Positions 3,786-46,957 of a stretch of 64,000 nt of DNA are shown here, piece by piece. Numbering within the stretch: the stretch's first letter is position 1; every line of letters starts with the position of its first letter. This DNA comes from Auanema rhodensis. Lineage: Eukaryota; Animalia; Nematoda. A model generated the notes under the pieces. That model saw only the letters and a program-made list of their open reading frames with translations, did no database searches and was not told the DNA's origin. The position numbers were made by a program, and so were the translations under genes. The stretch lies in the NCBI GenBank assembly GCA_964057225.1, contig OZ059896.1, positions 17,546,001 through 17,610,000 on the forward strand, given 5' to 3'.

Positions 3786-4092
3786 ACTTTCTTTTGCTCT
3801 CAAGAACCTTGTGCTTTCTAAAAATGAATATTTTATTTTTTAAGCTTTTTTCTAGCAAACAATGCTTTGTGGGAACCCTGGGATACTGTTTCAGAAACTT
3901 TAACAAAGGAAGTTGCGTTTTGATATCGAAATGATGGATTTATATATATTTCATGGTGTTCAACATATCGTTTCCATAAAAGTTACAAATGAAAAAATCA
4001 AAAACATTCTTTTCTGGAAAATCCAAAATTCTATTGGCCGGGAAAAGATTAATTTCTCCAGCGTGATTCGAAAGTACTCTGAAAGGTTTGTA

Positions 4093-4163
4093 GCATCGGT
4101 GGTTCAGTGGTAGAATGCTCGCCTGCCACGCGGGCGACCCGGGTTCGATTCCCGGCCGATGCA
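4093..4163 (+). tRNA. tRNA-Gly(GCC) copy 2
   Basis: Same 71-mer, 378 bp after copy 1. Confidence 0.96.
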
Positions 4164-4468
4164 ACTTTCTTTTGCTCTCAAGAACCTTGTGCTTTCTAAA
4201 AATGACTATTTTATTTTTTAAGCTTTTTTCTAGCAAACAATGCTTTGTGGGAACCCTAGGATACCATTTCAGAAACTTGAAAGAAGAAAGTGGCGTTTTG
4301 ATATGGAAATGATGAATTTATACATTTCTTGGAGTTCAACATCTCGTTTCCAGAAAAGTTACAAATAAGAAAATCAAAAACATTCTTTTCTGGAAAATCC
4401 AAAATTCTATTGGCCGGGAAAAGATTGATTTCTCCAGCCTGAAACGAAAGTACTCTAAAAGTTTTGTA

Positions 4469-4539
4469 GCATCGGTGGTTCAGTGGTAGAATGCTCGCCT
4501 GCCACGCGGGCGACCCGGGTTCGATTCCCGGCCGATGCA
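4469..4539 (+). tRNA. tRNA-Gly(GCC) copy 3
   Basis: Same 71-mer, 376 bp after copy 2. Confidence 0.96.
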
Positions 4540-23622: not shown

Positions 23623-26612
23623 TAGTCTTACTAAAGGACAAGGATAAAACGGTGGTTCAGACCAGATGAGTCATACGATAAAGACAGCAACGAGGAGAGA
23701 GAAAAGCGACCGTCGGTGATGGTGATATAAAACAGAGTGCCCCGTGGATCTCAGATCAAAGCGAGATGGTATCCCATTGCTTGAGAGATGAATAATCGCA
23801 TTCGCGATATTCCGGGCCAGAGGAGAAATCAGCTGTGATTTCATTCCGCTGGTTCCTCCGCAAACTGCAGCTTGCATAATACGCCGGGATGGTCATGGTC
23901 CAGTCCACTTCCTTTGCACACATGTCAGATCTTCTTCAACTTCTCCAAGCACGGTTTTCCAAAGGGGTTCCGTAAACACTTAACACACAAGTTAATCAAC
24001 TTGCAACGCTTGACGCGTTGGGTCGCAGTCTTGTAGACTGTGCATTTTCCCATGGTGTGGCCCTTCTTCCAACAAAGTTGGGATTTCATGTCTTCGTCCA
24101 TTTTCTGTACTTAGTCTTGATGTTTTTCCGCTTCTTGGGAACAGAAGATTGTTTAGGCATGGCAGGTGCCTCTGTTATACCATTATCTTGAAGTTGGTCG
24201 AGCGAATCGCTCAGATCTTTGATCTTGTCAAGACTGAAATTATTATGTATTTCTTATACGAAGTATACCTCCCCCGGGCAAGATAAAAAAAATTGTTAAA
24301 CTATATGTTGATTGTAAAATTATAATTGAATAATCTGTTGCTATGGTATGGAAACAAAAAATCTAAGAATCATGTGACATTGAACTGTTGACTGGTCAGT
24401 CAGAGTGCGTGTCCTTAGTCACTGTGTAACGCGTGGCTCGAACTACAACTTTCAGAAGCATTTGAATCATGAAAAAGATGATTCGAAATGGAACTGCGCA
24501 AATAATGAGTATTTGAAATGATATGAATGCTAAAAGAGCAGATGTACTTGACAAATGAAAGATGCGGTCAAGCATGGCTGTTACAAAGCCGAGTACCATG
24601 ACTAATATACCTATTAGTATCAGAACCCTTTTTAGGTAACCGGAATAAAACAAAACGAGTGAACTGATCAAGTGACTGGGTAAAGAGATCTGCGGTATGT
24701 TGAACTTGGCGTTCATGAGATTGAATGTGTTATTCGGTGAGACGATTGTTGGATACCGCTGTTTTCTTCTACGTACAAGTGACCCTTGAGATGTAGTGTT
24801 GCTGAGTTGCACAGATGAGTACAAGCTATTAAAGGTGTAGATGAGTTGCTATGTATGCGAACGGAGTTGTTGTACCCGTGAGAAGAGCATGTGATCAGAA
24901 ATTCTTCATTATCGCACGAGAGTCGAATGCGTGAGAAAACACTTCGGCAGTTAATGACTGTTGTTGCTCCAAGGACACAGTCAAAGCAACCAGTTAGGTC
25001 AGTGGAGTAGAGTTTGCAGGATGAAGAAGTGTTCTCATATTCATAAGTGATTTCGGAGATGTTGGTCCACATTTTAATGACTGCACTGACGGGATAAGCG
25101 AAAATTGAGTTTTTCTTGTAACTCATAGTGAAAGATAGAAGAGATAGCGGTAGCGTATAGTTATTATCATAGAATTCGCGAACATTGTTGTTTATGCAAT
25201 AGCAAGTTTCGACTGTTTCGGCTGGTCTGCATGAATAGGTATCTGTTTCAGTACACTCGGAGAATGGGTCAGCGGTTTTACCTTTTCCGCACGAATATGA
25301 AAATGTAGCAGAGTGAGGTAAAATTGCAATTCTTGAGTTGGAAGTAATGAATCGTCTATGGAGGATTTCATTATCAGAATATGTTACTCCAACAAGAGTA
25401 ATATGGTATCCTTTAATAATTTTTGTATAATGTGGTAAGAATGAGATGTGTGAGATTGTTTCAGTTTTGTTCTCTATAGTTGAATGGATACTAATTTGGA
25501 GAAAAACCTTAGGTGTCCATCGTGAGCAGTAGAAAACTTTGTGTGTGATATTGTGATTGGTAACATGAAAGTTGCGATAAAAGAGACAACCAGAAGTCGG
25601 CAACGCACAACCGCATGATAGAAATCCACAAATTTCTGAACAATAGCTGGTACCCGGATATTGGTTAGCTGATGAGAGTTCGGAGATCGATGTATTGGGC
25701 CGAACGTTCGCACAAAATGATCCTACACAAGAGCCCATATGGGGACACCGTTTGGCGGATTCAGTTTTAACGATGGTGTGACTTCTAAAAAATTTTGGCG
25801 TATGATCGGTTTGAATGTAAAGTTGTAAAACATACCACATTGTCGTAAGTAAGGAGGGTGGTGGAGGTGCTGACTTGGTGGACTTGGTGGGTAGGTGATA
25901 AGTTCGAGACGGAGTTGCCTGGAACATGTGATATACTCGGAGGAAATAGTACATGAATTAACTACGAGAGATTCAATTTAAAAAATGACGATAATTGCAA
26001 CCAAAAGATACCCGACTCAGTGAACTAATCGGTCACGTTGTCGTGAGTGTTTCGAGGGCGTAAATTTCTGCCATCGAGGTAGCTTCTGAGAGCTGAGTGG
26101 AACGTACTCGAGTACCGATCGTTCTTCCTGAATAGAGATATGATGTTTTATATGAGAGGGGATACGATTGAGTGATCATACGCCAAACGAAAAAAAAAGT
26201 GTATTGCATAATCTGAACAAATTTTTCAGAACAAATTCGGATGAGTACGATGCTCAAAAGAATGCCAAAGAGAATGAGCCATATAATGAGGGCGGTCGCC
26301 GAGAGTGCTGCGTATGGGAAACAAGAGGGGTTGTGGATTAGTTCAAGACAGAACAGACATTGAATCATTTCTCAAAACGGAGTTGCTGAACAGTCAAGTT
26401 GATGCAAGCGAATGTGTCATTTTTATCGATAATATGTCGTGAGATAAATGTGTGATCATGCAGCACAACGTGAGCTGGAAATACTATGGTGAAGTTGGGA
26501 GTACTGGGGTTGTAGTCTACACATGTTTCTCGGGCACAAACTCGGATGGGATGTCCCGTACCGCAGTTGGATATACCTACTCCTCCTTTGATGCAAGAGA
26601 ACTGGCAGATGG
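23623..26612 (-). mobile_element. Truncated, divergent BEL/Pao element 3: Gn-Gc env pseudogene (about 24400-26612), decayed 3' knuckle ORF (about 23840-24230), PPT and LTR start at 23809
   Basis: Gc motifs KRCPHMGSC, YPGTSYCSEICGFLSCGC..SGCLFYR, LTGCFDCVLGA; Gn motifs CIKGGV, IQCLFC..IHNPSC plus TM; GGCCCGGAA followed by TATCGCG. The LTR may extend to 21556 across the nested Tc3 and MITE (inference). Confidence 0.85.
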
Positions 26613-27003: not shown

Positions 27004-27074
27004 TGCATCGGCCGGGAATCGAACCCGGGTCGCCCGCGTGGCAGGCGAGCATTCTACCACTGAACCACCGATGC
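27004..27074 (-). tRNA. tRNA-Gly(GCC) copy 4
   Basis: Exact reverse complement of the 71-mer. Confidence 0.95.
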
Positions 27075-27258: not shown

Positions 27259-27618
27259 TTAATACTTTCTGTTATCTATTGCCACTAAATTGTGATAACA
27301 ATAGAACTCAGAACTGTTGTTGTTGATTGATACAGTTCCACCCGTAAACTATACGGCGCGCAATCATCAATGGTCGGATAAAAAACAAGACCTTTCCGAG
27401 GCAGTGATGACTTTTTCTTTCCAACGCTTGAAATGAGAATAATCTTGATTACTTCCATAAAGAAGCTGAGCCAAAATATTTTGAAATTTGTATGCTTGTT
27501 TTGGTCTTAGAAATAAGTTCTGTGTAACTCAGAGGAAAATGTAACTCATAACTTTTTTGGAAACGAGATGTTGAACACGATGAAATGTATAAATTCATCA
27601 TTTCGATATCAAAACGCA
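27259..27618 (-). repeat. Older inverted copy of about 30126-30468 plus 40228-40251; contains the empty target site of element 1
   Basis: Reverse complement reads ...CACAATTTAGTGGCAATAGATAACAGAAAGTATTAA without interruption. Confidence 0.9.
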
Positions 27619-27627
27619 AAAGAAAGT

Positions 27628-27675
27628 TGCATCGGGCGGGAATCAAACCAGGGTCGCCCGCGTGGCAGGCGAGCA
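27628..27675 (-). pseudogene. Truncated, mutated tRNA-Gly remnant
   Basis: TGCATCGGGCGGGAATCAAACCAGGGTCGCCCGCGTGGCAGGCGAGCA; 5' third missing. Confidence 0.85.
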
Positions 27676-28409: not shown

Positions 28410-29463
28410 TGGTTGAAGCTCCTCAAACTAAGGGATGTGATAGCGCAAGACAAATGAACATTTCTGTTGCTCTAAATAAGTGGAGATGCACCAGAAAGGA
28501 CTGTAGAAAAGAAGTTTTGATTAAGAAAGGAACATATCTTCAAGGTTATAAAGTTAAAAACTAAATATTAATAGCATTAACATTTTAGGCTCAAAATTGT
28601 CGTACACAAAGTTCATTCTTTTCGTGTGTTGTTGGAGTAAAGAATACACCACCATTGAGTTTTGCCAAGATGAATTAGATATGAAATCTTGCCAGACCGC
28701 TGTTGATTACAACAATTATATGAGGGAAATTTGTGCATTCAGCATCTTGAAGCATCCCATGAAGATTGGAGGTCCAAATATGACTGTGGAAATTGATGAA
28801 ACGTTAGTTTCACGTAGGAAGTTCAATGTAGGAAGGGTAAGACCAGCTCAATGGGTTTTCGGGGGAGTATGTAGGGAAACAGAAGAGTGTTTTTCATATG
28901 CTGTTCCTGATAGCACTACAGAAACCTTGAACAGCTGCATTACTAACTGTATAGAGCCACAAACTACCATAGTTAGTGATTGCTGGAGAGCATATGGGGG
29001 AATTGATGATCTTATCCAACAGTATAGACATCTGACAGTTAACCACAGATACAACTTCACGGATCCAGAGACAGGAGCTAACACTAATATGATTGAAGGA
29101 CTTTGGAGCTTGGCTAAAGCGAAATTCAAGCGCATGTATGGGGTACGTCAAACAATGTTAGACGGATACCTATGTGAGTTTATGTGGCGTAGAAGAAATA
29201 GGAACTGGGACCTTTTCCAAAGTATATTACAAGATATTGCTGAATTTACTCCAGAAGAAATTTGAAAAATGTTAAATTGTATTAATGAAAGCTGTTAATG
29301 AATTAATAATAATAACTTTTGTGCTTATATTTACGTTTTTTTAGTTGTTATATATTCTGGAAACCTCCGTATCTCATATAGTTATAACATTTAACAAAAG
29401 TATGCACCAAACGGCAAAAGGGGCAGGGCTAAAATCGGGGGGTATAGATATGGAACAAGCGCC
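28410..29463 (+). mobile_element. Merlin/ISXO2-like element; catalytic exon open (28597-29265), 5' end lost
   Basis: VEIDET..IVSDCWRAY..NTNMIEGLW DDE triad, YLCEFMWRRR; intron about 28544-28589; terminus ...CAAGCGCC. Confidence 0.88.
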
Positions 29464-29976: not shown

Positions 29977-30047
29977 GCATCGGTGGTTCAGTGGTAGAAT
30001 GCTCGCCTGCCACGCGGGCGACCCGGGTTCGATTCCCGGCCGATGCA
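29977..30047 (+). tRNA. tRNA-Gly(GCC) copy 5
   Basis: Exact 71-mer, preceded by a full unit spacer and a 3' tRNA remnant at 29652-29671. Confidence 0.95.
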
Positions 30048-30533
30048 ACTTTATTTTGCTCTCAAGAACTCTGTGCTTGCTGCTGAACTACAGGAAACCT
30101 TTTCAGAAACTTCAACAAAGAAAGTTGCGTTTTGATATCCAATGATAATGAATTTATACATTTCATTGTGTTCAACATCTCGTTTTCAAAAAAGTTATTA
30201 GTTATATTTTCCTCAGAGTTACACAGAAAATCTTTCTAAGTCGAAAACAAGCATACAAATTTCAAAATATTTAGGCTCAGCTTCTTTATGGAAGTAATCA
30301 AGATTATTCTCATTTCAAGCGTTGGAAAGAAAAAGTCATCACTGCCTCGGAGAGCTCTTGTTTTTTATCCGACCATTGATGATTGCGCGCCGTATAGTTT
30401 ACGGGTGGAACTGTATCAATCAACAACAACAGTTCTGAGTTCTATTGTTATCACAATTTAGTGGCAATTGTCGCGATAAGCGAGTGAGTTTGTATAAATT
30501 TTATCTTCAACAATTGTTTTATTTGTCTTTCCT

Positions 30534-30577
<44 letters not shown>

Positions 30578-30828
30578 CTTCTTTCTTGTAACTTCCTAAG
30601 TAATTTTTATCCATACCACATGTTGTGTTATACATGTGGCATGACTAACTCTTTGTTTCAGGCTGACGACCGCCCACGAGAAGAGATCAGACTTACATTT
30701 TCAACGTTCGCAGTCAGTGATTTTATTCCGTGCTTGTCTTGTTAATTCATCAATAAACCCTTTTCTACATATTCAATTTGTGTTTTACTTCCAACCATAC
30801 TATACACTTGTGGTAGATCGCCACAAAT

Positions 30829-30883
30829 TGGTGCATCGGCTAGTTCAGATCTTAGCCGCTTCAAGTCCCGCGTGGCAGGTGAG
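30829..30883 (+). promoter_or_regulatory. Primer-binding site for tRNA-Gly(GCC) plus a second block complementary to the anticodon arm
   Basis: TGGTGCATCGGC complements GCCGAUGCA-CCA; CCCGCGTGGCAGGTGAG matches 16/17 of the complement of CUCGCCUGCCACGCGGG. Confidence 0.9.
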
Positions 30884-31103
30884 ATACAGCTCAAACCAAG
30901 CGTGTTTGAGCAAAAAACATACTTAATAGAAATCGTGGCAACCATTAGTCCACGTCAAGTCACACCAAAAAGACTTGAACCATAAGCAAACTCTGCAGAC
31001 AGAAACAGAGATTCACTATCACATATACTGTGATCACCAAACAAACAAAAAAAAAAGAGAAAGTAAAAGGAATATAAGCGTTATTCCTACATCTACGACA
31101 AAA

Positions 31104-34100
31104 ATGTCACTCCTTTTTGTCAATCATATCAAACAGTCTAACCAGTTTCTCGGAGAATTACTTACACGATACGAGATGGAAGTGAAGGACCTTCCTGGTA
31201 TTCTGGTAGATTGCGACTTCCACACTGAGGAAGAAGAGGAAACCCTCTCTTGCCTTATCATTCGCTGGACAAAAGTCCAACACCAATTCAAAGAATCGTT
31301 GAAAAATCATCAAGATAACGAGAAAAAATTCCAAAAATTTTACGAAGCATCAGACAAAACGCTTCGTAAAGCATTAGACGAACAGTACATCGCCTTCACA
31401 TCCGATGAAGACTTTGAACCCAACATTAAAAAGGTTCAAAACGCCATTATTGAGCTTGACGAACACATCATGAAAGCCGAACGCATACTTAGAAAGCTGA
31501 GAAAAACGCTTCATAAGAATGAATCTGAGCACAACAGCAATCGCTCAACAGAAAACAATGAAACAGAAAACAAATCGAATGATCAATTTCTGGAAATTAT
31601 CAAGTCATTCCTACACATCCAACAAACTAGTATCCAAAAACCAGCGATGTCGCTACCTACATTTGATGGCAAACCAGAGAACTTCAAATCATTCTGGGGC
31701 CGTTTTGATAGACTTGTTCATGATAATGAACAGTTTACAACCTTAGAAAAGGTAAACCTACTCTGTGAAAGCCTCAAAGGCGATTCACAAATAGCAATCA
31801 GAGGAATAGAACCCTCTGCTCAAAATTATGAGCTTATGCGTGAAGCATTAGTTTCTGAATTTGGAGACTATTCGTCGGATATCAACTCTCTTTTGACACA
31901 ACTACGTAATTTGAAATTTGCAAGCAATAATGCAAAAGCATGCAAAGAAACATTTGGAGAAACCAAGGCACTTATCAGGCAAATTGAAGCAGCCGGAGCT
32001 ACAGTATCCCGCGAAATGTGTACCGCGATGATTCTCAACAAATTCCCATACCACATCGTGGAAGACATTCTAATTCATCCAAACAACTACCATTCTACTA
32101 AAGAAATGCTGACAGCTGTAGACCACAAAATCTATTCCTTTTTTCTAAAAGAACAAACAAGAAATAGTCATGAACAAAAGTTTCGAAATCACAAAGACAA
32201 TGTCACATCTGTTTCACATAAAGACAGCACTGCAGAACAACGGAAAACCCAAACTTGGCCATGTGTCTTTTGCGACTCATCCGAGCATCGTTTTTATCAA
32301 TGCACCACATTTGAAACACCAGAGAAAAGAAGGTACCGCATTCGCGGAAAGGCCATCTGTTGGATTTGCTTTTCCGATAAACACAAAAGTTCGGAATGCA
32401 GAAAACAAAAATGTCGCAATTGCCAAGGAGATCATAATTCCGCCTTGTGCTCACAAGGAAGAAAAAGTGTACAAAATATCCAAAAAGATAAAGAAACTCC
32501 CACAATTAAAAAAGATCAGGCTTTACTGATCACCACAGAAGAATTATTGAATAAAAAAACAACAGAATATAAACAAGAATCTGACACTAATAATCGAATC
32601 CCTACTGAGGCACTTAATGCACCAGTATCGCTTAATCACATTGCTGACACACATAATATTGAAGAAAGTCAAGTAATATTACGAACAGCAATGGCGAACA
32701 TATACAACCACAATAGTAAAAAATATGAGCAAGTACGCATGCTCATAGATGAAGGATCCATGAGATCTTTTATATCCAAGGACCTATCTACAAGATTAGG
32801 ACTGCCCATTCTTGGTTCTCAGAAGAGAACCTTTTACGGCATTGGAGCATTATCAGAAACACATGAAGTTGAAGATGTTAAGGTAATTATTGGAACCTCA
32901 ACTGGATCCCTTATCGTAACAAAACTGTTCACAAAACCCATGTTAACCACACCTATACGGTGTCCTAAACTATCTAATGAAGACTTAAAATTCATACAAA
33001 GAAGAAAAATTAAATTAGCCAATCCAAAAACAAACGGAGAATCATTTACTCCGGATATACTGATAGGTATGGATAGATACAAACTATTCATGCACTTAAA
33101 CGAAGAAACCGAACTCCCCTCACGTATGAGATTGAAAAACTCGGTATTCGGCCACATGATACATGGGGAAGCTCCTCTTCCCGATGATAATACACAACAA
33201 GAAGTAATATTATGCTCTACATTAGAAGAGATAACAAAAGAAACCTCTCATAAAGAACTCCTCACTAATCTGTTTGAACTGGATTCTATCGGCATCAATA
33301 CAGAAAATGCCAACGCAGACCGCACTATTGATTACTATGAAGAATACTCAAAAGATATAAAAATTGAGAACAACCGTATTATTGCACCGTTCCCGTTAAA
33401 AAATAACTTCAAAAATCTCAAAAACAACAAAATGCCCGCGTACCATAGATTCGTATCCCTATGGCGAAAGTTACTGCACAATCCAGAAATGCTCTCACAC
33501 TATACTACAACCATTGAAAGTTACCTCAAAGATAACATTGTTGAACAAATTCCCAACAATCACCAGGAGCCTTTAGAGTTTTATATGCCCCACCATGGGG
33601 TTTGGAAGCCCAGCAAGGCTAACCCTCTCAGAATCGTTTTTGACGCCTCCGCTAAACAGAAGGATAGCCCATCGTTGAATGAGATAATACACACAGGACG
33701 ATCATTTATCACATATATACACGACATCATGATCTCCTGCAGAACAAGACCAATAATAATAACATGCGATATTAAAGCCGCATTTCTACAAGTACAATTG
33801 ACAGAAAATCACAAGAATTTATGCAAATTCTTTTGGATAAAAAACAAAGAATACCCAATATCACACAATAATATCATAACCCTTCGATTCAACAGATTAC
33901 CATTCGGTATCACTGCATCCCCCAGCGTATTGAACATGGGCATAAAATGGTTCTTAGAATCAAAAGTAGACAACCCATTAGCTATGGAAATCCTGCACAA
34001 CTTATACGTCGACAATATCATTCTTACAGCAAATACAACCGAAGAAGCTATAAAAAAATGTAAAGAAACCCAAACACTATTCTCAGAAATAAACATGCAT

Positions 34101-37100
34101 GTTCGCGAATTCTTGTCAAACGATGAACAAGTAATACAGAACCTTCCTGAAGAAGACAGATATCCGAACATGACAACCAAAATACTTGGCATATCTTTTA
34201 ATAAAGAACACGACTCCTTCATTATCCCAATAAAAATAACAACGACTCACACAAGTTACACCAAGAGAATTCTACTCAGTCAGTTACATTCAATATTTGA
34301 TCCCATTGGATTATCAGCACCAATACTGTTACTCCTCAAACTTATCTTGCGAGAAATCATTAGCACAAAATTATCATGGGACCAACCCATTGACTCAAAC
34401 AGTATCAAGCAATGGGAACAACATATTACTCAGATTAACAATAAGCAATTAACCATGAACAGATATTTTAAGTTTTCTGAACATGAAACACAGTTATGGG
34501 TCTTCGCTGACGCAAGCAACCAAGCAATGGCCGCTTGTTCATATTTCCAAACAAATGGGAAGATTAGTTCTCTGCTAAACGGGAAATCACGCATAGCACC
34601 CAAAAATAAAACTACAATTCCACGATTAGAGTTACTAGCCATTCGTTTAGCTGTACGAATGGCATTATCTATCGTCACCATATGTCCGAAAATAGCGAAA
34701 GTTAACATTGTGAGCGATAGCAACATCGCACTATCATGGATTGTCTCACAAAAATCTCTCCCACTGTTCATTAATAATCAAACAAATACTATAAAGAAAC
34801 AGCTCAAGCAAATCGAACAAATATGTTGCAATATAGAACTATATCACGTACAAACCTCGTTCAACACAGCAGACATCGGATCTCGAGGTGCAGACATGGA
34901 AAAACTACAAGTTTCCGACTGGATTGAAGGCCCACATTGGTTAACTAAACTTTCCGTGCATAACCCTCTGACATCACTCGGCTCACCTAACAACTCGAGC
35001 AGGAATAACGCAGAATTAAAATCGGAGCATCACAATGTTGTCCACATAATCATAGACAATCCTCCAACCCATGATATTTGGAACATTCGTGAAAACTATG
35101 ATGACGTGATCAAAACAATGACAACCGTAGGGAAATTATTCAAGAAATGGTTTTTCACAGTCCATCCTAACGACGCCAACAAGTTGCAAAAAATAAAACA
35201 TCTCACATCAACAGACACGCACACTGTTGAAGACATCAACATTATTGAAAAAATTTTGATCAGTAACAGTCAATCTAATATGAGCCTTGATGACTTACAG
35301 CAAAGACATATAAATCTAAAATTCTTCAAAGATACATGGGATATTTATCGCGTAAGAAGCCGTTTACAAAATACTCTTCTTCCCGAAGAGACGAAAAACC
35401 CTATATTCCTTCTTAAAACAAACCCCATAGTTAAAAAACTGATCAACAAAATACACAAAGACAATAATCATCAAGGCAAACATTTCACGCTTATTCAACT
35501 CAGACAAAAGTTCTATATACCAAAAATAACCGGAGTCATTAAGCAAACATTGAAAAACTGTGTGACATGTAAAAGATTTCAATCACACCCTTATGAATTA
35601 CCAGATATGCCATCGCTACCAAAAGATAGAACGATTCTTACAAGAGCATTCTTTTCAACAGGGTGTGATCTTATGGGCCCCTTCACCCTTCGAAATGGGT
35701 CTAAAGTCCATATCTGTCTGTTTACATGCATGACAACTAGAGCAATTCACTTAGAGGTAGTCACCAATCAATCCACAGTTGCTTTTATGAATGCATTCAC
35801 TAGATTTATATCACGCAGAGGTACTCCAGAAATTATGCGTAGTGACTGCGCAGGAAACTTTATATTGAGCTCAAAAATATTAGAAACCCTTGAAAAAACA
35901 TCGGATTACAACGAAAGAAGCTTACTAAACACACTAGCACAACAAAAAATTAAATGGATATACAACACTCCATTATCACCCTGGAAAGGTGGATGTTGGG
36001 AACGTTTAGTAGGTGTAACCAAAGCTTCACTCAAAAAATGTTTCATCCCTAGTCGAATGTCCCTGGATGACTTACACACAGCCATTGTAAAAATAGAAGC
36101 TATAATTAATACACGCCCACTCACCCATCCACACCCAGATAATTTAGATACTCTACCCATAAGGCCAATTGACTTTTTAACATCAGCCATAAAGTTTTCA
36201 TTACCTGAAAACAACGCGGATACTCATATATTTGATATCCATAGCGATATTCAAACGATTCAATCAACAGAGCAAGCGCTAGAAGCGCTTCAATTATCAG
36301 AAGACTCAGCATCTAAATTTTGGAAACGATTTCAAGAAGAATATCTAACAAGCTTAAAAGATATATTTAAGCATAAACACCATAGAAAGAATCACACAAA
36401 CAACTTCCCCCAACCAGATGAAATAGTATTGATACAAAACGACATGTTGCCACGAGGAACATGGAAACTAGGTCGCATCATTGAAACAATCACTAGTTCA
36501 GATGGCAACATACGTTCAGCAAAAGTTGCAACAAGCAACGGAAACATAATTATTCGATCCATCAATCAGCTCTATCCACTAGAGATAAGATGCAACACTA
36601 ACAGCAACAAAATCATAGAAGACAACTCACACATAGTTCAAGAAAATAATAGCTCAACAGATAGAACCCCACATACTGATATTGTATTAGACAATATACT
36701 TTTCGATCATCCTATAGAACATACAGATCAAACAATACATGAGAATAAAGACATAAATGATGTTAGCCATAATTACGATATTGCATATGACTCAGATAAC
36801 TCTCAACATGATAATACATACACTCCAGAAACAGAGAATAATGAGGATGCAACAAATGATCGACCTCAAAATAAGACAAAACAATCATCAGTAAAAACAG
36901 CAAAACATACAGAACAAGATGATGTCACTGAGAAGGAAATTATAAAAGCCTTCCCACTAAAAATGTCCTATGCTACACACCAAAGAAAAAATAAAATAAA
37001 CCCAAAAGTAGCAGCTGACATAATGAAAGCGCTTTCCTTACCGATTATAATTACTTCGACATATGCCGAAGAAATCAATAGTTGCAAGGACTCTAACATG

Positions 37101-39035
37101 TTCACCACAAAACTTATAGCGAATCCTCATTGCTCCCCAGAAATGGCAACATGGACAGTGCTAATAACCATTATGGCAGTTACCCTCATAGTCTCTTGTC
37201 TATGCCGCATGGGCTACAGCCAATATAGATATAAGACATGGTCCAAAAACACTCAAACCATGCTCAACATCATGAAATTAAAACATAAAACAATCTCCGA
37301 ACAAGAAGATCATGAAACTGATCAAAAAATAACAGAAGACCACAATGATACGTTGCAATTAAAACAAACGAACACACAAGACGCTAATATTGTGGATCAT
37401 GAAACCTTTCAAAAGCATATTTACCCTATTTTAAACCATACGAGAAAGCCACCAAAATTCTCTCTCTTTACTAGAGGGTCGCAAACATCTTTACCATCGT
37501 TACTGGCAATCATCTTGGCTTTATGTATTGGAAGCTGCAGTTCATGTTCCGATGTTCATGTTCAACACTTCGTTAACATACGATGCGATGACAACTTAGC
37601 TTGTTATCACGAATACAGTCAAGATATCATATTTTCTCCCGGAACAAAACAATTATGCATTACCATAACGCATTCTAATCATGAAATTGGTCAATTTAAA
37701 ATAACTAAACTATATACTGAACATGTCTGCCAAAAGAATACTAGATACTTCACTAGACAGACAACCGTCAACATATTGAGCATATTACGATGCCGTCACC
37801 GGGGCTCGTGTGACGGAACATGTGAAACTAACTCGCTCCATAATAAAATCGAGGAACTACAACCATATACGTTCCCTTCACAATCAGGTTGCTTCACATC
37901 GTCAGCGAGATTTTACACATGTCCTATGATTTGGACAGATCCTTGTCTTTTCTACAAAATAGAGCATATACCCGTCACTGAGGAAGTATACGAAGTCTAT
38001 ACTTGTGATAGTTGGTCCACCCAAACCGTATTTAATATAGAAACAACATTACTCCAGCAGAAAAATAATTACAATATCACTCTACAACCTCACACGAAAA
38101 ATCGTGAACAACTTTTCAATATAACAACGTTATCACAATCACAACCTCCTCCAGAAATGTACACAAAATTATTTTTTTCCTCCAAAGAAAACACGTACAT
38201 TACGGATATACACACAAAGGGAATAATTCAATGTGCAACAGAGGAAGCCGCATTAAAACATTTTAATAACTGTACAGTATCCTCATTCTGCCCTTGCACA
38301 TTCAATAGATTTGATGAAATAAAATGTAGGTGTGATACCCCTACTTTTGAAAAAATGTCCAATACATCAGACATAAAATCTCCTAACCAAAACTTTAAAA
38401 CTAAAGATAACACGTTATCATTCTCTACGAATTTAGACGAAAATTTAGTTACGGTCGATTCATCCCTATTCTTAAACTCAGTGATTTTCTCCAACAATTT
38501 GCCTTGCGCACCTGCCCTGACAAAACTATCAGGTTGCTACTCCTGCGGGCAGGGTGCATTCGCAGAATTCCAATGCCTTACGGCAGAAGAAACATGGATT
38601 TCTATCGAATGTCAAAAAGAAGTATTCATGATAAAATGCTCTCCAAAAGTAGCAATCACAAAAGTAACAATGAAAAGAGAAAATTCTCAGATTGATGAAT
38701 TATGCTATACCACATGCGACAATAAAAAAATTAAGATCATTATTAAAGGAATATTACATCACATAGCAAGCATAGATGAAATAAACGAAAGTGACTCAAG
38801 TAAGGGTACAGAATCCAAATCCATTGACTTCGCTCCAATCTTCAAGTTAATTTTATCAAAGTTGGGAATCATATTGATAGGCGTTGCAATAACCGCCACC
38901 ATAGGATATGTGGCATGTACACCCATCATGTACTGTGTAGTTTTGAATACAGTCTTAACCACACAATGGATAGCTACCAGGATATTCACACTGTGGATAA
39001 AATCAAAAGCCTTATTTCGGGATCAAAGATTTTAA
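31104..39035 (+). CDS. 2643-aa Gag-PR-RT-RNaseH-IN-Env polyprotein
   Basis: LPTFDG (Pao Gag), three CCHC knuckles, LIDEGS protease, DIKAAF/LPFG/YVDN RT, FADAS/RLELLA RNase H, HHCC plus DLMGP/SDCA/WERLV integrase, Cys-rich Gc-like env (LRCRHRGSC, CLFYK, LSGCYSCGQGA) with TM; first ATG at 31104. Confidence 0.95.
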   Translation: MSLLFVNHIKQSNQFLGELLTRYEMEVKDLPGILVDCDFHTEEEEETLSCLIIRWTKVQHQFKESLKNHQDNEKKFQKFYEASDKTLRKALDEQYIAFTSDEDFEPNIKKVQNAIIELDEHIMKAERILRKLRKTLHKNESEHNSNRSTENNETENKSNDQFLEIIKSFLHIQQTSIQKPAMSLPTFDGKPENFKSFWGRFDRLVHDNEQFTTLEKVNLLCESLKGDSQIAIRGIEPSAQNYELMREALVSEFGDYSSDINSLLTQLRNLKFASNNAKACKETFGETKALIRQIEAAGATVSREMCTAMILNKFPYHIVEDILIHPNNYHSTKEMLTAVDHKIYSFFLKEQTRNSHEQKFRNHKDNVTSVSHKDSTAEQRKTQTWPCVFCDSSEHRFYQCTTFETPEKRRYRIRGKAICWICFSDKHKSSECRKQKCRNCQGDHNSALCSQGRKSVQNIQKDKETPTIKKDQALLITTEELLNKKTTEYKQESDTNNRIPTEALNAPVSLNHIADTHNIEESQVILRTAMANIYNHNSKKYEQVRMLIDEGSMRSFISKDLSTRLGLPILGSQKRTFYGIGALSETHEVEDVKVIIGTSTGSLIVTKLFTKPMLTTPIRCPKLSNEDLKFIQRRKIKLANPKTNGESFTPDILIGMDRYKLFMHLNEETELPSRMRLKNSVFGHMIHGEAPLPDDNTQQEVILCSTLEEITKETSHKELLTNLFELDSIGINTENANADRTIDYYEEYSKDIKIENNRIIAPFPLKNNFKNLKNNKMPAYHRFVSLWRKLLHNPEMLSHYTTTIESYLKDNIVEQIPNNHQEPLEFYMPHHGVWKPSKANPLRIVFDASAKQKDSPSLNEIIHTGRSFITYIHDIMISCRTRPIIITCDIKAAFLQVQLTENHKNLCKFFWIKNKEYPISHNNIITLRFNRLPFGITASPSVLNMGIKWFLESKVDNPLAMEILHNLYVDNIILTANTTEEAIKKCKETQTLFSEINMHVREFLSNDEQVIQNLPEEDRYPNMTTKILGISFNKEHDSFIIPIKITTTHTSYTKRILLSQLHSIFDPIGLSAPILLLLKLILREIISTKLSWDQPIDSNSIKQWEQHITQINNKQLTMNRYFKFSEHETQLWVFADASNQAMAACSYFQTNGKISSLLNGKSRIAPKNKTTIPRLELLAIRLAVRMALSIVTICPKIAKVNIVSDSNIALSWIVSQKSLPLFINNQTNTIKKQLKQIEQICCNIELYHVQTSFNTADIGSRGADMEKLQVSDWIEGPHWLTKLSVHNPLTSLGSPNNSSRNNAELKSEHHNVVHIIIDNPPTHDIWNIRENYDDVIKTMTTVGKLFKKWFFTVHPNDANKLQKIKHLTSTDTHTVEDINIIEKILISNSQSNMSLDDLQQRHINLKFFKDTWDIYRVRSRLQNTLLPEETKNPIFLLKTNPIVKKLINKIHKDNNHQGKHFTLIQLRQKFYIPKITGVIKQTLKNCVTCKRFQSHPYELPDMPSLPKDRTILTRAFFSTGCDLMGPFTLRNGSKVHICLFTCMTTRAIHLEVVTNQSTVAFMNAFTRFISRRGTPEIMRSDCAGNFILSSKILETLEKTSDYNERSLLNTLAQQKIKWIYNTPLSPWKGGCWERLVGVTKASLKKCFIPSRMSLDDLHTAIVKIEAIINTRPLTHPHPDNLDTLPIRPIDFLTSAIKFSLPENNADTHIFDIHSDIQTIQSTEQALEALQLSEDSASKFWKRFQEEYLTSLKDIFKHKHHRKNHTNNFPQPDEIVLIQNDMLPRGTWKLGRIIETITSSDGNIRSAKVATSNGNIIIRSINQLYPLEIRCNTNSNKIIEDNSHIVQENNSSTDRTPHTDIVLDNILFDHPIEHTDQTIHENKDINDVSHNYDIAYDSDNSQHDNTYTPETENNEDATNDRPQNKTKQSSVKTAKHTEQDDVTEKEIIKAFPLKMSYATHQRKNKINPKVAADIMKALSLPIIITSTYAEEINSCKDSNMFTTKLIANPHCSPEMATWTVLITIMAVTLIVSCLCRMGYSQYRYKTWSKNTQTMLNIMKLKHKTISEQEDHETDQKITEDHNDTLQLKQTNTQDANIVDHETFQKHIYPILNHTRKPPKFSLFTRGSQTSLPSLLAIILALCIGSCSSCSDVHVQHFVNIRCDDNLACYHEYSQDIIFSPGTKQLCITITHSNHEIGQFKITKLYTEHVCQKNTRYFTRQTTVNILSILRCRHRGSCDGTCETNSLHNKIEELQPYTFPSQSGCFTSSARFYTCPMIWTDPCLFYKIEHIPVTEEVYEVYTCDSWSTQTVFNIETTLLQQKNNYNITLQPHTKNREQLFNITTLSQSQPPPEMYTKLFFSSKENTYITDIHTKGIIQCATEEAALKHFNNCTVSSFCPCTFNRFDEIKCRCDTPTFEKMSNTSDIKSPNQNFKTKDNTLSFSTNLDENLVTVDSSLFLNSVIFSNNLPCAPALTKLSGCYSCGQGAFAEFQCLTAEETWISIECQKEVFMIKCSPKVAITKVTMKRENSQIDELCYTTCDNKKIKIIIKGILHHIASIDEINESDSSKGTESKSIDFAPIFKLILSKLGIILIGVAITATIGYVACTPIMYCVVLNTVLTTQWIATRIFTLWIKSKALFRDQRF

Positions 39036-39382
39036 AAGCATAAGAGAAGAATTTCTTGTGGAGATTAAATTTAAAATTAAAAATTGAAATAATAATGAAA
39101 CAAAAGAAAAAGAAAGCATTATGTACGAATATAACCATTGTAATAAAACAATATCATTGTTTTTCTTTCTTTTCAATTTATGGTAGTATCAAGTTTCTTT
39201 TATCCAACTCAGTTACATAACACATAACCTTTTGTACAGGCTCTAAAATTCATTGTATCTGTAACAAGATAACCTAAACACACCATTGTACAATAAACTA
39301 ATAGATGTTAATCAGCGTTTAAAGTCCAGATGTGAACATGTATATAAGGATGCAGCTCATGTTTCTCCTATATTCCATGAAA

Positions 39383-39844
39383 ATGGAAGATATTGTCTCG
39401 AATATAATTGAGAATGCTTCCTTTGAGGAAGAGCTCAAAAAATATTCCCATCTACCTAACACTGCTGCCAATCTGAGGCAACTAATTGTGCTTGAAAAGA
39501 GGCTCTACGAGCACCTAGCTAGCGCGGTGAACCATCTATCCGAACGACTGGACAATATTCAACATTCGTTAAATCTGAAACTAGACAATTTGACCATTCA
39601 GACTGCTCCTAAAGCTTCATGTGTATTCTGCAATAAACCGACAGCTGATGGGCACCGTACTGCGGCCTGTCCGATTTATCCTTCCTCACCGGAACGCACT
39701 CTCCGTCTTCATGAACTGGGGTTATGCATCAGATGTTTGAATCAAAAACATCCAGCGATTTGCGAGGTATCCTGCTATAGATGTAAGGCGGATACGCATC
39801 ATGGAGTGGTTTGTGGTGATATAAAACGTAAAAGACCTTTGTAG
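39383..39844 (+). CDS. 153-aa 3' accessory ORF of element 1 (helical N-terminus, three Cys/His knuckles, KRKRP tail)
   Basis: Open frame between env and PPT; same length as, and about 80% identical to, the element-2 ORF. Confidence 0.82.
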   Translation: MEDIVSNIIENASFEEELKKYSHLPNTAANLRQLIVLEKRLYEHLASAVNHLSERLDNIQHSLNLKLDNLTIQTAPKASCVFCNKPTADGHRTAACPIYPSSPERTLRLHELGLCIRCLNQKHPAICEVSCYRCKADTHHGVVCGDIKRKRPL

Positions 39845-39939
39845 GCCTTCTTCTCATTCCCGCATTGCCGGGAGTGTCGCGATAAGCGAGTGAGTTTGTA
39901 TAAATTTTATCTTCAACAATTGTTTTATTTGTCTTTCCT

Positions 39940-39979
<40 letters not shown>

Positions 39980-40294
39980 CTTCTTTCTTGTAACTTCCTA
40001 AGTAATTTTTATCCATACCACATGTTGTGTTATACATGTGGCATGACTAACTCTTTGTTTCAGGCTGACGACCGCCCACGAGAAGAGATCAGACTTACAT
40101 TTTCAACGTTCGCAGTCAGTGATTTTATTCCGTGCTTGTCTTGTTAATTCATCAATAAACCCTTTTCTACATATTCAATTTGTGTTTTACTTCCAACCAT
40201 ACTATACACTTGTGGTAGATCGCCACAGCAATAGATAACAGAAAGTATTAACGATTTCTCCAGCGTGATTCGAAAGTACTCTGAAAGGTTTGTA

Positions 40295-40365
40295 GCATCG
40301 GTGGTTCAGTGGTAGAATGCTCGCCTGCCACGCGGGCGACCCGGGTTCGATTCCCGGCCGATGCA
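40295..40365 (+). tRNA. tRNA-Gly(GCC) copy 6
   Basis: Exact 71-mer. Confidence 0.95.
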
Positions 40366-40675
40366 ACTTTCTTTTGCTCTCAAGAACTCTGTGCTTTCTA
40401 AAAATGACTATTTTATTTTTTAAGCTTTTTTCTAGCAAACAATGCTTTGTGGGAACCCTAGGATACCATTTCAGAAATTTGAAAGAAGAAAGTGGCGTTT
40501 TGGATATTTTGTGCGTTCCTTCTGTATCGAAATGATGAATTTATGCATTTCATAGTGTTCAACAACTCGTTTCCATAAAAGTTACAACATTCTTTTCTGG
40601 ATAATCCAATATTCTATTGGCCGGGGAACGATTGATTTCTCCAGCGTGATTCGAAAGTACTCTGAAAGGTTTGTA

Positions 40676-40746
40676 GCATCGGTGGTTCAGTGGTAGAATG
40701 CTCGCCTGCCACGCGGGCGACCCGGGTTCGATTCCCGGCCGATGCA
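40676..40746 (+). tRNA. tRNA-Gly(GCC) copy 7
   Basis: Exact 71-mer, 381-bp period. Confidence 0.95.
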
Positions 40747-41056
40747 ACTTTCTTTTGCTCTCAAGAACTCTGTGCTTTCTAAAAATGACTATTTTATTTT
40801 TTAAGCTTTTTTCTAGCAAACAATGCTTTGTGGGAACCCTAGGATACCATTTCAGAAATTTGAAAGAAGAAAGTGGCGTTTTGGATATTTCGTGCGTTCC
40901 TTCTGTATCGAAATGATGAATTTATGCATTTCATAGTGTTCAACAACTCGTTTCCATAAAAGTTACAACATTCTTTTCTGGATAATCCAATATTCTATTG
41001 GCCGGGGAACGATTGATTTCTCCAGCGTGATTCGAAAGTACTCTGAAAGGTTTGTA

Positions 41057-41127
41057 GCATCGGTGGTTCAGTGGTAGAATGCTCGCCTGCCACGCGGGCG
41101 ACCCGGGTTCGATTCCCGGCCGATGCA
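41057..41127 (+). tRNA. tRNA-Gly(GCC) copy 8
   Basis: Exact 71-mer, 381-bp period. Confidence 0.95.
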
Positions 41128-43667: not shown

Positions 43668-44737
43668 ATGTTCGCTCTAAAAGAAAGACTTCGTACTGAA
43701 GCTGATGCCATTCAATTTCTGCAAGAGAACGGTGTAATCCTTCAAACTAAATAATGTGACCGATGTACACGACAAATGACTTTTTCTACTGCTCGAAATA
43801 AGTGGAGATGTAACAGAAGGGGCTGTAGAAGGGAAATTTTAATAAAAAATGGAACATTTCTTCAAGGTATAAAGTTAAAATCTATATATTATCAACACCA
43901 ATATTTTAGGTTCAAAAATTGGAAATACCAAGTTCATTCTTTTCGTATACTGCTGGAGCAAGAAATACACTACTGTTAAGTTCTGTCTAGATGAGTTAGG
44001 AATAGGCTTTTGCAAAACAGCCGTGGATAATAATAACTTCATGAGAGAAGTTTGCGCATTTAATATTTTAAAGCATCCTCTAATGATTGGAGGTCCTAAT
44101 TTGAATGTTGAAATCGATGAAACGTTAGTTTCTCGTGGGAAGTTTAATATAAGTAGGATAAGGCCAGCGCAATGATTGTTCGCAGGGGTATGTAAGGAAA
44201 CAAGAGATTGCTTTTTATTTGCCGTTTCTAATAGAAGTACAGAAACTTTAAACAGCTGTATTTTTAACTGTATCGAGCGCGAAAGCACCATAGTCAGTGA
44301 TTGCTGGAGATTGGGGGTATCGATAGTCTTTTACAAGATTATAGGCATTTAACAGTTAATCATAGGTATAACTTCACAGATCCCGAGACCTGAGCTAATA
44401 CCAATATAATTAAAGGTCTGTGGGGTTTAGCTGAAGCTAAATTCAATCGCATGCATGGGGTTCATCAAAATATGTTAAATGGTTACCTCTGTGAGTTTAT
44501 GTGGTGTACAAGAAATGCTAACAAAGACCTTTTTGAATGTATTTTTAATGATATTGTTGAATTTACCCAGGAAAAAATTCAAACTTGTTAATGTGTATAT
44601 AATAATATTAATAATGAATGTATATAAAATTTCTTCGTATCTCATATTATTTCACATTTTAGGAAAAGTATGCGCCAAACGGAAAAAGGGGCGGGGCTAA
44701 AACAGGGATGGCGGGATATAGAAACGGAAAAAGCGCC
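43668..44737 (+). mobile_element. Merlin/ISXO2-like element (same family as 18766-19689) with 3' terminus
   Basis: Close nucleotide match to 18766-19689; stops; ends ...AAAAGCGCC like 29463. Confidence 0.86.
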
Positions 44738-46505: not shown

Positions 46506-46576
46506 TGCATCGGCCGGGAATCGAACCCGGGTCGCCCGCGTGGCAGGCGAGCATTCTACCACTGAACCACCGATGC
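46506..46576 (-). tRNA. tRNA-Gly(GCC) copy 9
   Basis: Exact reverse complement of the 71-mer. Confidence 0.95.
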
Positions 46577-46886
46577 TACATACCTTTCAGAGTACTTTCG
46601 AATCACGCTGGAGAAATCAATCGTTCCCCGGCCAATAGAATATTGGATTATCCAGAAAAGAATGTTGTAACTTTTATGGAAACGAGTTGTTGAACACTAT
46701 GAAATGCATAAATTCATCATTTCGATACAGAAGGAACGCACGAAATATCCAAAACGCCACTTTCTTCTTTCAAATTTCTGAAATGGTATCCTAGGGTTCC
46801 CACAAAGCATTGTTTGCTAGAAAAAAGCTTAAAAAATAAAATAGTCATTTTTAGAAAGCACAGAGTTCTTGAGAGCAAAAGAAAGT

Positions 46887-46957
46887 TGCATCGGCCGGGA
46901 ATCGAACCCGGGTCGCCCGCGTGGCAGGCGAGCATTCTACCACTGAACCACCGATGC
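46887..46957 (-). tRNA. tRNA-Gly(GCC) copy 10
   Basis: Exact reverse complement of the 71-mer. Confidence 0.95.

What the first reader, a model, noticed from the sequence alone, without database searches (positions are those of the whole stretch)
30829..30883. Bipartite tRNA-Gly primer site: acceptor-end block, hairpin, then anticodon-arm block
Seen: TGGTGCATCGGC (30829-30840) pairs with the tRNA 3' end including CCA. After a 26-nt linker, CCCGCGTGGCAGGTGAG (30867-30883) is complementary at 16/17 positions to the whole anticodon stem-loop, with 13 contiguous matches. A 6-bp hairpin CGGCTA/TAGCCG (30837-30858) overlaps the PBS and replaces the T-arm complement. Known: Ty1 and Ty3 use extended or bipartite tRNA contacts on the T and D arms, and HIV-1 contacts the anticodon loop via a short A-rich loop. 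Inference: a two-point primer capture that unfolds the anticodon arm, possibly a priming switch, a tRNA-half primer site, or evasion of 3'-tRF silencing through the shortened PBS.
Basis: partly seen in the sequence, partly recalled or inferred. Interest (0 to 1): 0.85.

Follow-up and report, generated by a model that had tools for sequence, protein, structure and literature searches.

The report
Two-site tRNA-Gly primer dock in a nematode retroelement
An intact retrovirus-like element of a nematode has, besides its short primer-binding site, a second stretch that pairs with the anticodon arm of the same glycine tRNA; similar second stretches occur in distant relatives, so it is probably a real, previously undescribed extra contact with the primer.

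Summary
TGGTGCATCGGC (30829-30840) pairs 12/12 with the 3' end plus CCA of tRNA-Gly-GCC, which has ten identical genes in the window. CCCGCGTGGCAGGTGAG (30867-30883) pairs with the whole anticodon arm, 16 Watson-Crick pairs plus one G.U. Both lie in the leader of an intact 9.76-kb BEL/Pao (belpaovirus) element of the Cer13/Atlas type, 30469-40227.

It is not a one-off. Six of eight relatives' leaders with a tRNA-Gly-type PBS carry a second exact antisense block of 12-15 nt. Four target the anticodon arm and two the D arm. About 0.01 such blocks are expected by chance, none is in the sense orientation, and 235 chance PBS look-alikes have none. The block type follows the gag tree, while its distance from the PBS varies from 26 to about 535 nt. 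A distant BEL/Pao lineage has a degenerate antisense image of the whole tRNA after its LTR.

Best reading: an extended, multi-site primer contact analogous to Ty1, Ty3 and the HIV-1 A-loop, probably descended from a read-through copy of the primer. Pairing and function are inferred, not shown. This is a new variant of a known kind.

The parts
30464..30468 (+). Target-site duplication GCAAT, left copy; the right copy is 40228-40232
   Evidence: Read
30469..30825 (+). 5' LTR (TG...CA, 357 bp) with a (CT)n microsatellite in U3
   Evidence: Identical to the 3' LTR except for 4 nt of (CT)n
30826..30828 (+). AAT spacer between the LTR and the PBS
   Evidence: Relatives have AAT or TTT at the same place
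30829..30840 (+). Primer-binding site, 12 nt, complementary to tRNA-Gly-GCC canonical positions 65-76 (one T-stem base, the acceptor 3' strand, the discriminator and CCA)
   Evidence: Duplex energy -23.2 kcal/mol
30837..30858 (+). It is present but weak, and its function is doubtful
   Evidence: -7.9 kcal/mol. It forms in the 404-nt fold but not in the 90-nt MFE fold. It is not conserved in relatives
30841..30866 (+). 26-nt linker with no significant similarity to the T-arm complement
   Evidence: Alignment against shuffles gives p = 0.65
30867..30883 (+). Block 2, complementary to the whole anticodon stem-loop (canonical positions 27-43) of tRNA-Gly-GCC, 16 Watson-Crick pairs plus 1 G.U. The core CCGCGTGGCAG is shared with relatives
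   Evidence: Duplex energy -38.0 kcal/mol, against -10.7 for the tRNA's own anticodon hairpin
30889..30911 (+). 8-bp hairpin GCTCAAAC/GTTTGAGC just after block 2
   Evidence: Present in both folds. Role unknown
31104..39035 (+). Single gag-pol-env ORF of 2643 aa: DUF1759 gag, protease, RT with YVDN, Peptidase_A17, integrase, DUF5641, and the phlebovirus G2 fusion and C-terminal domains
39332..39844 (+). Small Cys/His-rich ORF of 170 aa after env, conserved in the L003 relative
   Evidence: BLASTP E = 4e-11. No Pfam hit
39867..39874 (+). Short purine-rich stretch (ends GGGAG) abutting the 3' LTR, a candidate polypurine tract
   Evidence: L003 has CCGGAG directly before its TGTCGCG, which looks like the same junction. 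Inferred
39875..40227 (+). 3' LTR (353 bp)
29977..30047 (+). tRNA-Gly-GCC gene, one of ten identical copies and the presumed primer species. Another copy at 40295-40365 starts 67 nt after the 3' LTR end

Best explanation
The element is an intact belpaovirus (BEL/Pao) of the Cer13/Atlas type in a nematode genome. Reverse transcription is primed from the 3' end of host tRNA-Gly-GCC on a short 12-nt PBS. Block 2 is a second docking site on the genomic RNA for the same tRNA. It pairs with the anticodon loop and stem (11-17 bp), which would open that arm and add more binding energy than the PBS itself. The likely roles are to select the GCC isoacceptor, to hold the primer on a PBS too short to be stable or specific by itself, and to shape the initiation complex. 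This is what the boxes of Ty1, the distal half of the Ty3 PBS and the HIV-1 A-rich loop do. The block probably began as part of a read-through copy of the whole primer, with the useful parts kept by selection. Sister lineages keep the D-arm complement instead, and one distant lineage keeps a degenerate image of the whole tRNA. Shown: the complementarity, its recurrence, its orientation bias, its agreement with the phylogeny, and the priming position given by the LTR end. Inferred: actual pairing in particles, the functional role, and the read-through origin.
For: The complementarity is exact and non-random. The element is intact and young: LTRs identical apart from (CT)n length, a TSD, and one 2643-aa ORF. 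Eight leaders with a tRNA-Gly-type PBS (4,286 nt) hold six antisense exact matches of 12-15 nt to the tRNA body and none in the sense orientation. The other 133 kb of the same loci hold one 11-nt antisense match. Anticodon-arm blocks are in the window, L008/L007, L011 (Ancylostoma duodenale) and L012b (Heligmosomoides polygyrus). D-arm blocks are in L003 and L013 (Haemonchus contortus). As an empirical null, 235 chance PBS look-alikes in IMG/VR (150 kb of equivalent zones) have none of 12 nt or more. The gag tree puts the Gly-PBS elements in one clade (98/96). The anticodon-block elements L008, L011 and L012b form a 100/100 subclade, and the D-block elements fall in the other subclade (97/96). 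Gag branches are 0.5-1.8 changes per site, yet the blocks stay perfect. The flanks of the block differ between lineages, while the 5' edge sits at tRNA position 43 in three of the four and at 42 in L008. The PBS is only 12-13 nt in every relative. Predicted energies are -23.2 kcal/mol for the PBS and -38.0 for block 2, and the dimer is about 25 kcal/mol better than the separate folds. L250, L251 and L252 have a colinear degenerate antisense image of the whole tRNA after the LTR (score 19 against shuffles of 3.6 +/- 1.9). Precedents for extended primer contacts are reviewed in PMC5371799 and PMC11181671. PMC8742986 confirms that belpaoviruses use tRNA-Gly.
Against: There is no experimental evidence of pairing. 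Two Gly-primed relatives (L006, L012a) have no second block, so it is not indispensable. The distance from the PBS ranges from 26 to about 535 nt, and in L013 the block lies upstream of the PBS, so no fixed geometry is conserved. The blocks are not predicted to be more accessible than the rest of the leader (percentiles 15-99). The four anticodon blocks may descend from one ancestral event and the two D blocks from another, so there are only two or three independent origins. The host tRNA sequences of the relatives were not available and are assumed to be conserved. The PBS of L008 (TGGTGCGTCG...) does not match the window's tRNA-Gly-GCC acceptor stem although its block does match the GCC anticodon arm. 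tRNA modifications are ignored in the energy estimates.
Confidence: 0.6

Rival explanations
1. Block 2 is a functionless fossil. Plus-strand synthesis once read through the whole primer tRNA and the copy was fixed after the PBS. Block 2 is whatever has not yet decayed.
For: The order PBS then anticodon block, and the 26-nt spacing against 21 nt in the tRNA, are colinear with an antisense tRNA. L012b keeps a recognisable T-arm complement right after its PBS (p = 0.016). L250 and L252 keep a whole-length image.
Against: Neutral decay should be even. Here the linker and the D-arm region are indistinguishable from random (p = 0.65 and 0.64), while block 2 is 17/17 paired. The same core stays perfect in four lineages whose gag proteins differ by more than one change per site. 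In three of them it lies far from the PBS, separated by unrelated sequence.
Confidence: 0.14
2. The block does pair with tRNA-Gly-GCC, but for a purpose other than priming. One tRNA could bridge two genomic RNAs for dimerisation or packaging, or tRNA binding near the gag start could switch the RNA from translation to packaging.
For: The variable distance from the PBS (26 to about 535 nt) fits a contact made in trans or over long range better than a fixed initiation complex. D-arm blocks lie 20-40 nt before the gag ATG in L003, L254 and L250. Reviews cover Ty1/Ty3 dimerisation and packaging (PMC4974528, listed but not read here).
Against: No palindromic or kissing-loop partner was found. In the window the block is 220 nt from the ATG. 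There is no direct evidence.
Confidence: 0.17
3. Block 2 is an internal primer site for a cleaved tRNA, as in copia and Ty5, or a target or decoy for tRNA-Gly-derived small RNAs.
For: Ty5 and copia do prime from the anticodon stem-loop (PMC5371799). The 5' edge of the block is sharp, at tRNA position 43 in three lineages.
Against: The LTR ends 3 nt before the CCA-end PBS in the window and in the relatives. Productive priming therefore starts there; priming from block 2 would have carried the intervening leader into the LTR. The anticodon and D-arm blocks are not covered by any single known tRNA fragment class. A host silencing target would be selected against, not kept.
Confidence: 0.05
4. Chance resemblance.
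For: None beyond the G+C-rich composition of the block.
Against: About 0.01 blocks of 12 nt or more are expected in all eight leaders together and six are observed. There are zero in 150 kb of control zones and 0.00 in shuffles.
Confidence: 0.005

Closest known systems
Ty1 (Pseudoviridae) extended PBS: a 10-nt PBS plus boxes 0, 1 and 2.1 that pair with tRNAiMet
   Same: A short PBS at the tRNA 3' end is supplemented by further blocks in the 5' region of the genomic RNA. These pair with other arms of the same primer (PMC5371799; titles).
   Different: The boxes are about 6-7 nt and contact the T and D arms. Here the block is 13-17 nt and covers the anticodon arm. The virus family and the tRNA also differ, and the distance to the PBS is not fixed among relatives.
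Ty3 (Metaviridae) 5'-3' bipartite PBS
   Same: An 8-nt PBS plus a distant second segment. The D arm also contacts genomic RNA.
   Different: The second segment of Ty3 lies in U3 at the other end of the genome and pairs with the T arm. No match of 10 nt or more was found in the rest of this element, and only one 9-mer against about 2.5 expected by chance.
HIV-1 A-rich loop to anticodon loop contact of tRNA-Lys3 (with the PAS to T-arm contact)
   Same: A contact outside the PBS with the primer's anticodon that helps primer selection.
   Different: The HIV contact is a few nucleotides, involves the loop only, and lies upstream of the PBS. Here the whole loop plus stem strands are complemented, downstream of the PBS.
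Ty5 and copia priming from a tRNA cleaved in the anticodon stem-loop
   Same: Genomic complementarity to the anticodon stem-loop region of a tRNA.
   Different: In Ty5 and copia that site is the only PBS and abuts the LTR. Here the LTR-adjacent site matches the CCA end, and the anticodon block starts 41 nt after the LTR end.
Cer13 (C. elegans) and Atlas virus (Ancylostoma ceylanicum), belpaoviruses with a phlebovirus-like Env
   Same: The same kind of element: a single gag-pol-env polyprotein, identical LTRs, a YVDN RT motif, G2-like Env and a nematode host (PMC9094657).
   Different: Only 38% or less pol identity to any relative found. The Atlas paper does not mention a tRNA or a primer-binding site.

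Membership tests
Belpaoviridae (BEL/Pao LTR retroelements) | LTRs with TG...CA ends and a target-site duplication | tested here: met
   357- and 353-bp LTRs and the 5-bp TSD GCAAT
Belpaoviridae (BEL/Pao LTR retroelements) | Gag (DUF1759), Pao-type peptidase A17, RT, integrase and DUF5641, in that order | tested here: met
   Pfam hits along the 2643-aa ORF
Belpaoviridae (BEL/Pao LTR retroelements) | PBS complementary to the 3' end of tRNA-Arg or tRNA-Gly | tested here: met
   12/12 match to tRNA-Gly-GCC plus CCA. The ICTV profile PMC8742986 states 18 nt; here and in relatives it is 12-13 nt
Nematode belpaoviruses with phlebovirus-like Env (Cer13/Atlas type) | G2 (Gc)-like class II fusion domain fused after pol, and a YVDN RT motif | tested here: met
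   PF07245 at E = 7e-42 and PF19019. LYVDN is invariant in alignment A2. The nearest gag relatives are from rhabditine nematodes
Extended or bipartite primer-binding sites (Ty1/Ty3 type) | A second genomic segment complementary to another part of the same primer tRNA | tested here: met
   Block 2 pairs 17/17 with the anticodon arm
Extended or bipartite primer-binding sites (Ty1/Ty3 type) | The second segment is conserved among related elements | tested here: met
   Six of eight Gly-type leaders have one, and the block type follows the gag clades. Two leaders lack it
Extended or bipartite primer-binding sites (Ty1/Ty3 type) | Physical pairing with the tRNA in the initiation complex, and a requirement for efficient priming or tRNA packaging | not testable with these tools
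   Only predicted energies are available
Half-tRNA primer sites (copia/Ty5 type) | The LTR-adjacent PBS is complementary to an internal tRNA segment that ends in the anticodon stem-loop | tested here: not met
   The LTR-adjacent site matches the CCA end. Block 2 starts 41 nt after the LTR end
Inverted tRNA gene or pseudogene next to the element | A foldable tRNA on the opposite strand | tested here: not met
   No ARAGORN call in the leader. No Rfam tRNA match on either strand even at E = 10

The most novel reading that the evidence does not exclude
Belpaovirus leaders carry a modular antisense image of their primer tRNA. Different lineages keep different arms (acceptor always, then the anticodon arm or the D arm, rarely the T arm) as separate docking sites that can drift hundreds of nucleotides apart. 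The anticodon-arm site, at 13-17 bp, would bind more strongly than the PBS itself. It would act as the isoacceptor-specific selector or tether of the primer, and possibly as a tRNA bridge between genomic RNAs. That would make it the most extensive primer-genome contact described for any reverse-transcribing element.
Probability: 0.4. Interest if true: 0.75.

Novelty: new variant of a known kind. Interest (0 to 1): 0.64.

Why it matters
Replication of belpaoviruses is described as poorly understood and is inferred by analogy (PMC8742986). A conserved second tRNA contact would be the first cis-acting replication signal beyond the PBS proposed for this family. It would extend the extended-PBS principle from Pseudoviridae, Metaviridae and Retroviridae to a fourth family. 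It would also show a contact with a whole anticodon arm rather than a few loop bases. The idea can be tested directly with short RNA fragments. It also gives annotators a simple marker, a PBS plus an antisense anticodon or D-arm block, for assigning primers and spotting active elements in nematode genomes, including those of parasites.

Tried and rejected
1. I scanned JGI metagenome contigs for the PBS, a gap and block 2. The only hit was a chance match inside a high-GC bacterial gene.

2. A word-based homologue search with gag found only relatives of 25% identity or less. L001, L009 and L249 use other tRNAs, L004 has no recognisable PBS, and L010 is truncated in its leader. None of these could be tested, because their tRNA sequences are not at hand.

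3. I considered that the whole of 30829-30905 is a decayed antisense tRNA. The global score is significant only because of block 2. The linker and the D-arm region alone are not significant (p = 0.65 and 0.64), and there is no Rfam tRNA hit. It remains a possible origin, but is not demonstrated for the window.

4. RNAduplex energies of whole leaders against the tRNA were too noisy because of long interior loops. Only the window stands out, so I used exact-match counts instead.

5. Predicted accessibility of the blocks gave no consistent signal.

6. I asked whether insertion is targeted to tRNA genes. The window copy sits in a tRNA-Gly array, but no relative has a tRNA in its fetched flanks.

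7. Two 14-mer PBS scans of IMG/VR returned only chance hits, which I reused as a null set. A protein-pattern scan of IMG/VR found no relatives.

8. One look-up gave no record (P0058) and one gave no DNA (P0180).

The consensus lines that the aligners print automatically were not used.

Full report
**What is at the site**

The window is AT-rich eukaryotic DNA (GC 0.30-0.40). It has ten identical tRNA-Gly-GCC genes in short tandem arrays.

The finding lies in the leader of an LTR retroelement spanning 30469-40227 on the + strand.
- The LTRs are 30469-30825 and 39875-40227. They have TG...CA ends and are identical except for 4 nt of a (CT)n run.
- A 5-bp target-site duplication, GCAAT, flanks the element.
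- One uninterrupted ORF, 31104-39035, encodes 2643 aa.
- Pfam places DUF1759 (gag), Pao peptidase A17, RT, integrase zinc domain, DUF5641 and the phlebovirus G2 fusion and C-terminal domains along it. The RT motif is YVDN.

This is the architecture of Cer13 and of Atlas virus, the belpaoviruses with a phlebovirus-like Env (PMC9094657). The nearest gag relatives come from Auanema, Haemonchus, Necator, Oesophagostomum, Ancylostoma and Heligmosomoides. The host is therefore most likely a rhabditine nematode, but the species was not determined. The contig is not human. The closest pol found is only 38% identical, so this family is not represented closely in the databases I could reach.

**Checking the observation**

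- The PBS pairs 12/12 with the tRNA 3' end plus CCA and is unique in the window.
- Block 2 matches the antisense of the anticodon arm at 16/17, with 13 contiguous matches.
- The one difference puts U opposite G30, so all 17 positions pair at RNA level.
- Shuffles of the window give no matches to block 2.
- The predicted duplex energy is -38.0 kcal/mol for block 2 and -23.2 for the PBS. The tRNA's own anticodon hairpin is worth -10.7.
- The hairpin 30837-30858 exists (-7.9 kcal/mol) but is marginal. It is not used in the local MFE fold, which is itself no better than shuffles.

**Relatives**

I fetched every relative I could reach with a tRNA-Gly-type PBS.

| Leader | Source | PBS | Second block |
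|---|---|---|---|
| window | this element | 12 nt | anticodon arm, 17 nt (13 contiguous), 26 nt after the PBS |
| L003 | Logan contig, pol 38% identical | 12 nt | D arm, CACTGAACCACC, about 300 nt after the PBS and 40 nt before the gag ATG |
| L006 | Haemonchus contortus | 13 nt | none |
| L008/L007 | Logan contigs | TGGTGCGTCG..., does not match the window's acceptor stem | anticodon arm, CCGCGTGGCAGGC, about 250 nt downstream |
| L011 | Ancylostoma duodenale | 13 nt | anticodon arm, CCCGCGTGGCAG, 66 nt after the PBS |
| L012a | Heligmosomoides polygyrus | 13 nt | none |
| L012b | Heligmosomoides polygyrus | 13 nt, 1 mismatch | anticodon arm, CCCGCGTGGCAGG, about 520 nt downstream; also a recognisable T-arm complement right after the PBS |
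| L013 | Haemonchus contortus | 13 nt, 1 mismatch | D arm, TACCACTGAACCACC, 10 nt upstream of the PBS, in U5 |

**Statistics**

- The eight leader zones total 4,286 nt. They contain six antisense exact matches of 12-15 nt to the tRNA body and none in the sense orientation.
- The remaining 133 kb of the same loci contain one 11-nt antisense match and two T-loop sense matches.
- The analytic expectation for matches of 12 nt or more in all eight leaders is about 0.01.
- As an empirical null I used 235 chance occurrences of the PBS 13-mer in viral contigs (150 kb of equivalent zones). None has a match of 12 nt or more and one has an 11-mer.

The hits are not phylogenetically independent. A gag tree groups the Gly-PBS elements together (98/96). 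Within them, (L008,(L011,L012b)) has 100/100 support and all three carry the anticodon block. (L003,(L006,L013)) has 97/96 support and carries the D-arm block in two of three. The window element is unresolved at the base.

So there may be only two or three origins. However, gag has diverged by 0.5-1.8 changes per site along these branches and the leaders cannot be aligned, yet the blocks remain perfect. The 5' edge of the anticodon block is at tRNA position 43 in three lineages and at 42 in L008. Its 3' edge varies, and each lineage extends along the tRNA sequence in its own way.

**A wider pattern**

A scan of prokaryotic assemblies picked up BEL/Pao elements on eukaryotic contigs mis-binned into MAGs. 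They are 25-31% identical to the window's pol.
- In L250 and L251 (two independent insertions) and in the related L252, the sequence just after the LTR is a colinear, degenerate antisense image of the whole tRNA-Gly-GCC. Acceptor, T arm, anticodon arm and D arm follow in order. The alignment score is 19 against 3.6 +/- 1.9 for shuffles.
- L254 has a D-arm complement 20 nt before its gag ATG.
- ARAGORN does not see a tRNA in any of these leaders.

This suggests the ancestral state was a copy of the whole primer, such as plus-strand read-through would create, from which lineages retained different arms. For the window itself this origin is only suggested by the order and spacing. The linker and the region after block 2 are not significantly tRNA-like, and there is no Rfam tRNA hit.

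**Mechanism**

In the window and in the relatives whose LTR end could be read, the LTR ends 2-4 nt before the CCA-end PBS. Productive minus-strand priming therefore starts from the tRNA 3' end, not from block 2. That excludes the copia/Ty5-type reading.

The best-supported reading is an extended primer contact. A 12-13-nt PBS is supplemented by a second, stronger site on the anticodon arm, or on the D arm in the sister clade. This second site selects and holds tRNA-Gly-GCC. It is analogous to the Ty1 boxes, the Ty3 distal PBS and the HIV-1 A-loop.

Several points weigh against a simple picture:
- Two relatives lack any second block.
- The distance and even the side of the block relative to the PBS vary.
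- Predicted accessibility of the blocks is unremarkable.
- The PBS of L008 does not match the window's tRNA acceptor stem, and its host tRNA is unknown.

The variable spacing leaves room for a related role, such as tRNA-bridged dimerisation or packaging, or a translation-to-packaging switch where the block sits next to the gag ATG. A purely neutral read-through fossil is unlikely, given the uneven decay and the deep conservation.

**Literature**

The ICTV profile states only that belpaoviruses have a PBS for tRNA-Arg or tRNA-Gly and that replication is poorly understood (PMC8742986). The Atlas paper does not mention a tRNA or a primer-binding site. Full-text searches for bipartite or extended PBS in BEL/Pao or nematode elements returned only the yeast and retroviral cases. 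Subscription papers on Cer and BEL elements could not be searched. "Not described" therefore means not found in the open library.

**Verdict**

The two-point primer-contact reading is supported by comparative evidence but is untested biochemically. The hairpin, tRNA-half and tRF ideas are not supported. This is a new variant of a known kind of system.

Noticed in passing
window 3715-4539, 27004-27074, 29977-30047, 40295-41127, 46506-46957; degenerate copy 27616-27675: Ten sequence-identical tRNA-Gly-GCC genes, mostly in tandem arrays with a 376-381 bp period on both strands, plus one decayed copy. The element that uses this tRNA as primer is inserted inside the array, with its 3' LTR end 67 nt upstream of a tRNA gene. 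Relatives show no tRNA within their fetched flanks, so targeting is not indicated.
   Followed up: partly
window 24716-25954 (-): A 413-aa ORF with a phlebovirus G2 fusion domain (E = 2e-54). It is only 23% identical to the env of the intact element, so it is a remnant of a second, different belpaovirus. No leader or PBS for it was found in the window.
   Followed up: partly
window 39332-39844 (+); L003 9461-9931: A small Cys/His-rich ORF between env and the 3' LTR is conserved between this element and the L003 relative (BLASTP E = 4e-11) and has no Pfam family. It may be an accessory gene of this belpaovirus clade.
   Followed up: partly
window 28597-29262 (+): An ORF with an ISXO2-like DDE transposase domain (E = 3e-16) between the tRNA genes, probably a DNA-transposon remnant. 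Similar sequence recurs at 43837-44579.
   Followed up: no
window 30538-30572 and 39944-39974: The (CT)n microsatellite in U3 differs by 4 nt between the two otherwise identical LTRs. It is the only difference between them.
   Followed up: yes
L004 3001-11232 / L005: The gag-pol-env polyprotein of a related belpaovirus (P0011) carries a thymidine kinase Pfam hit (PF00265) and is named thymidine kinase by JGI. This may be a captured host or viral gene.
   Followed up: no
L249 (OZ246889.1, called an Acidobacteriota chromosome) and L250-L255 (MAG CBDDTI01): Complete BEL/Pao elements with LTRs sit in assemblies labelled as bacterial, which points to eukaryotic contamination or mis-binning in these MAGs.
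   Followed up: no
L011 2653-3808; L012 3113-3734: The leaders of the Ancylostoma and Heligmosomoides elements are 0.6-1.15 kb long and are built of internal repeats. The repeats separate the PBS from the anticodon block.
   Followed up: no
window 30780-30796 with 30874-30887: In the 404-nt fold, the 3' half of block 2 pairs with a U5 segment (GUGUUUUACUUCC). This would form a U5-leader stem enclosing the PBS, so tRNA binding at block 2 would compete with it. Conservation was not tested.
   Followed up: no
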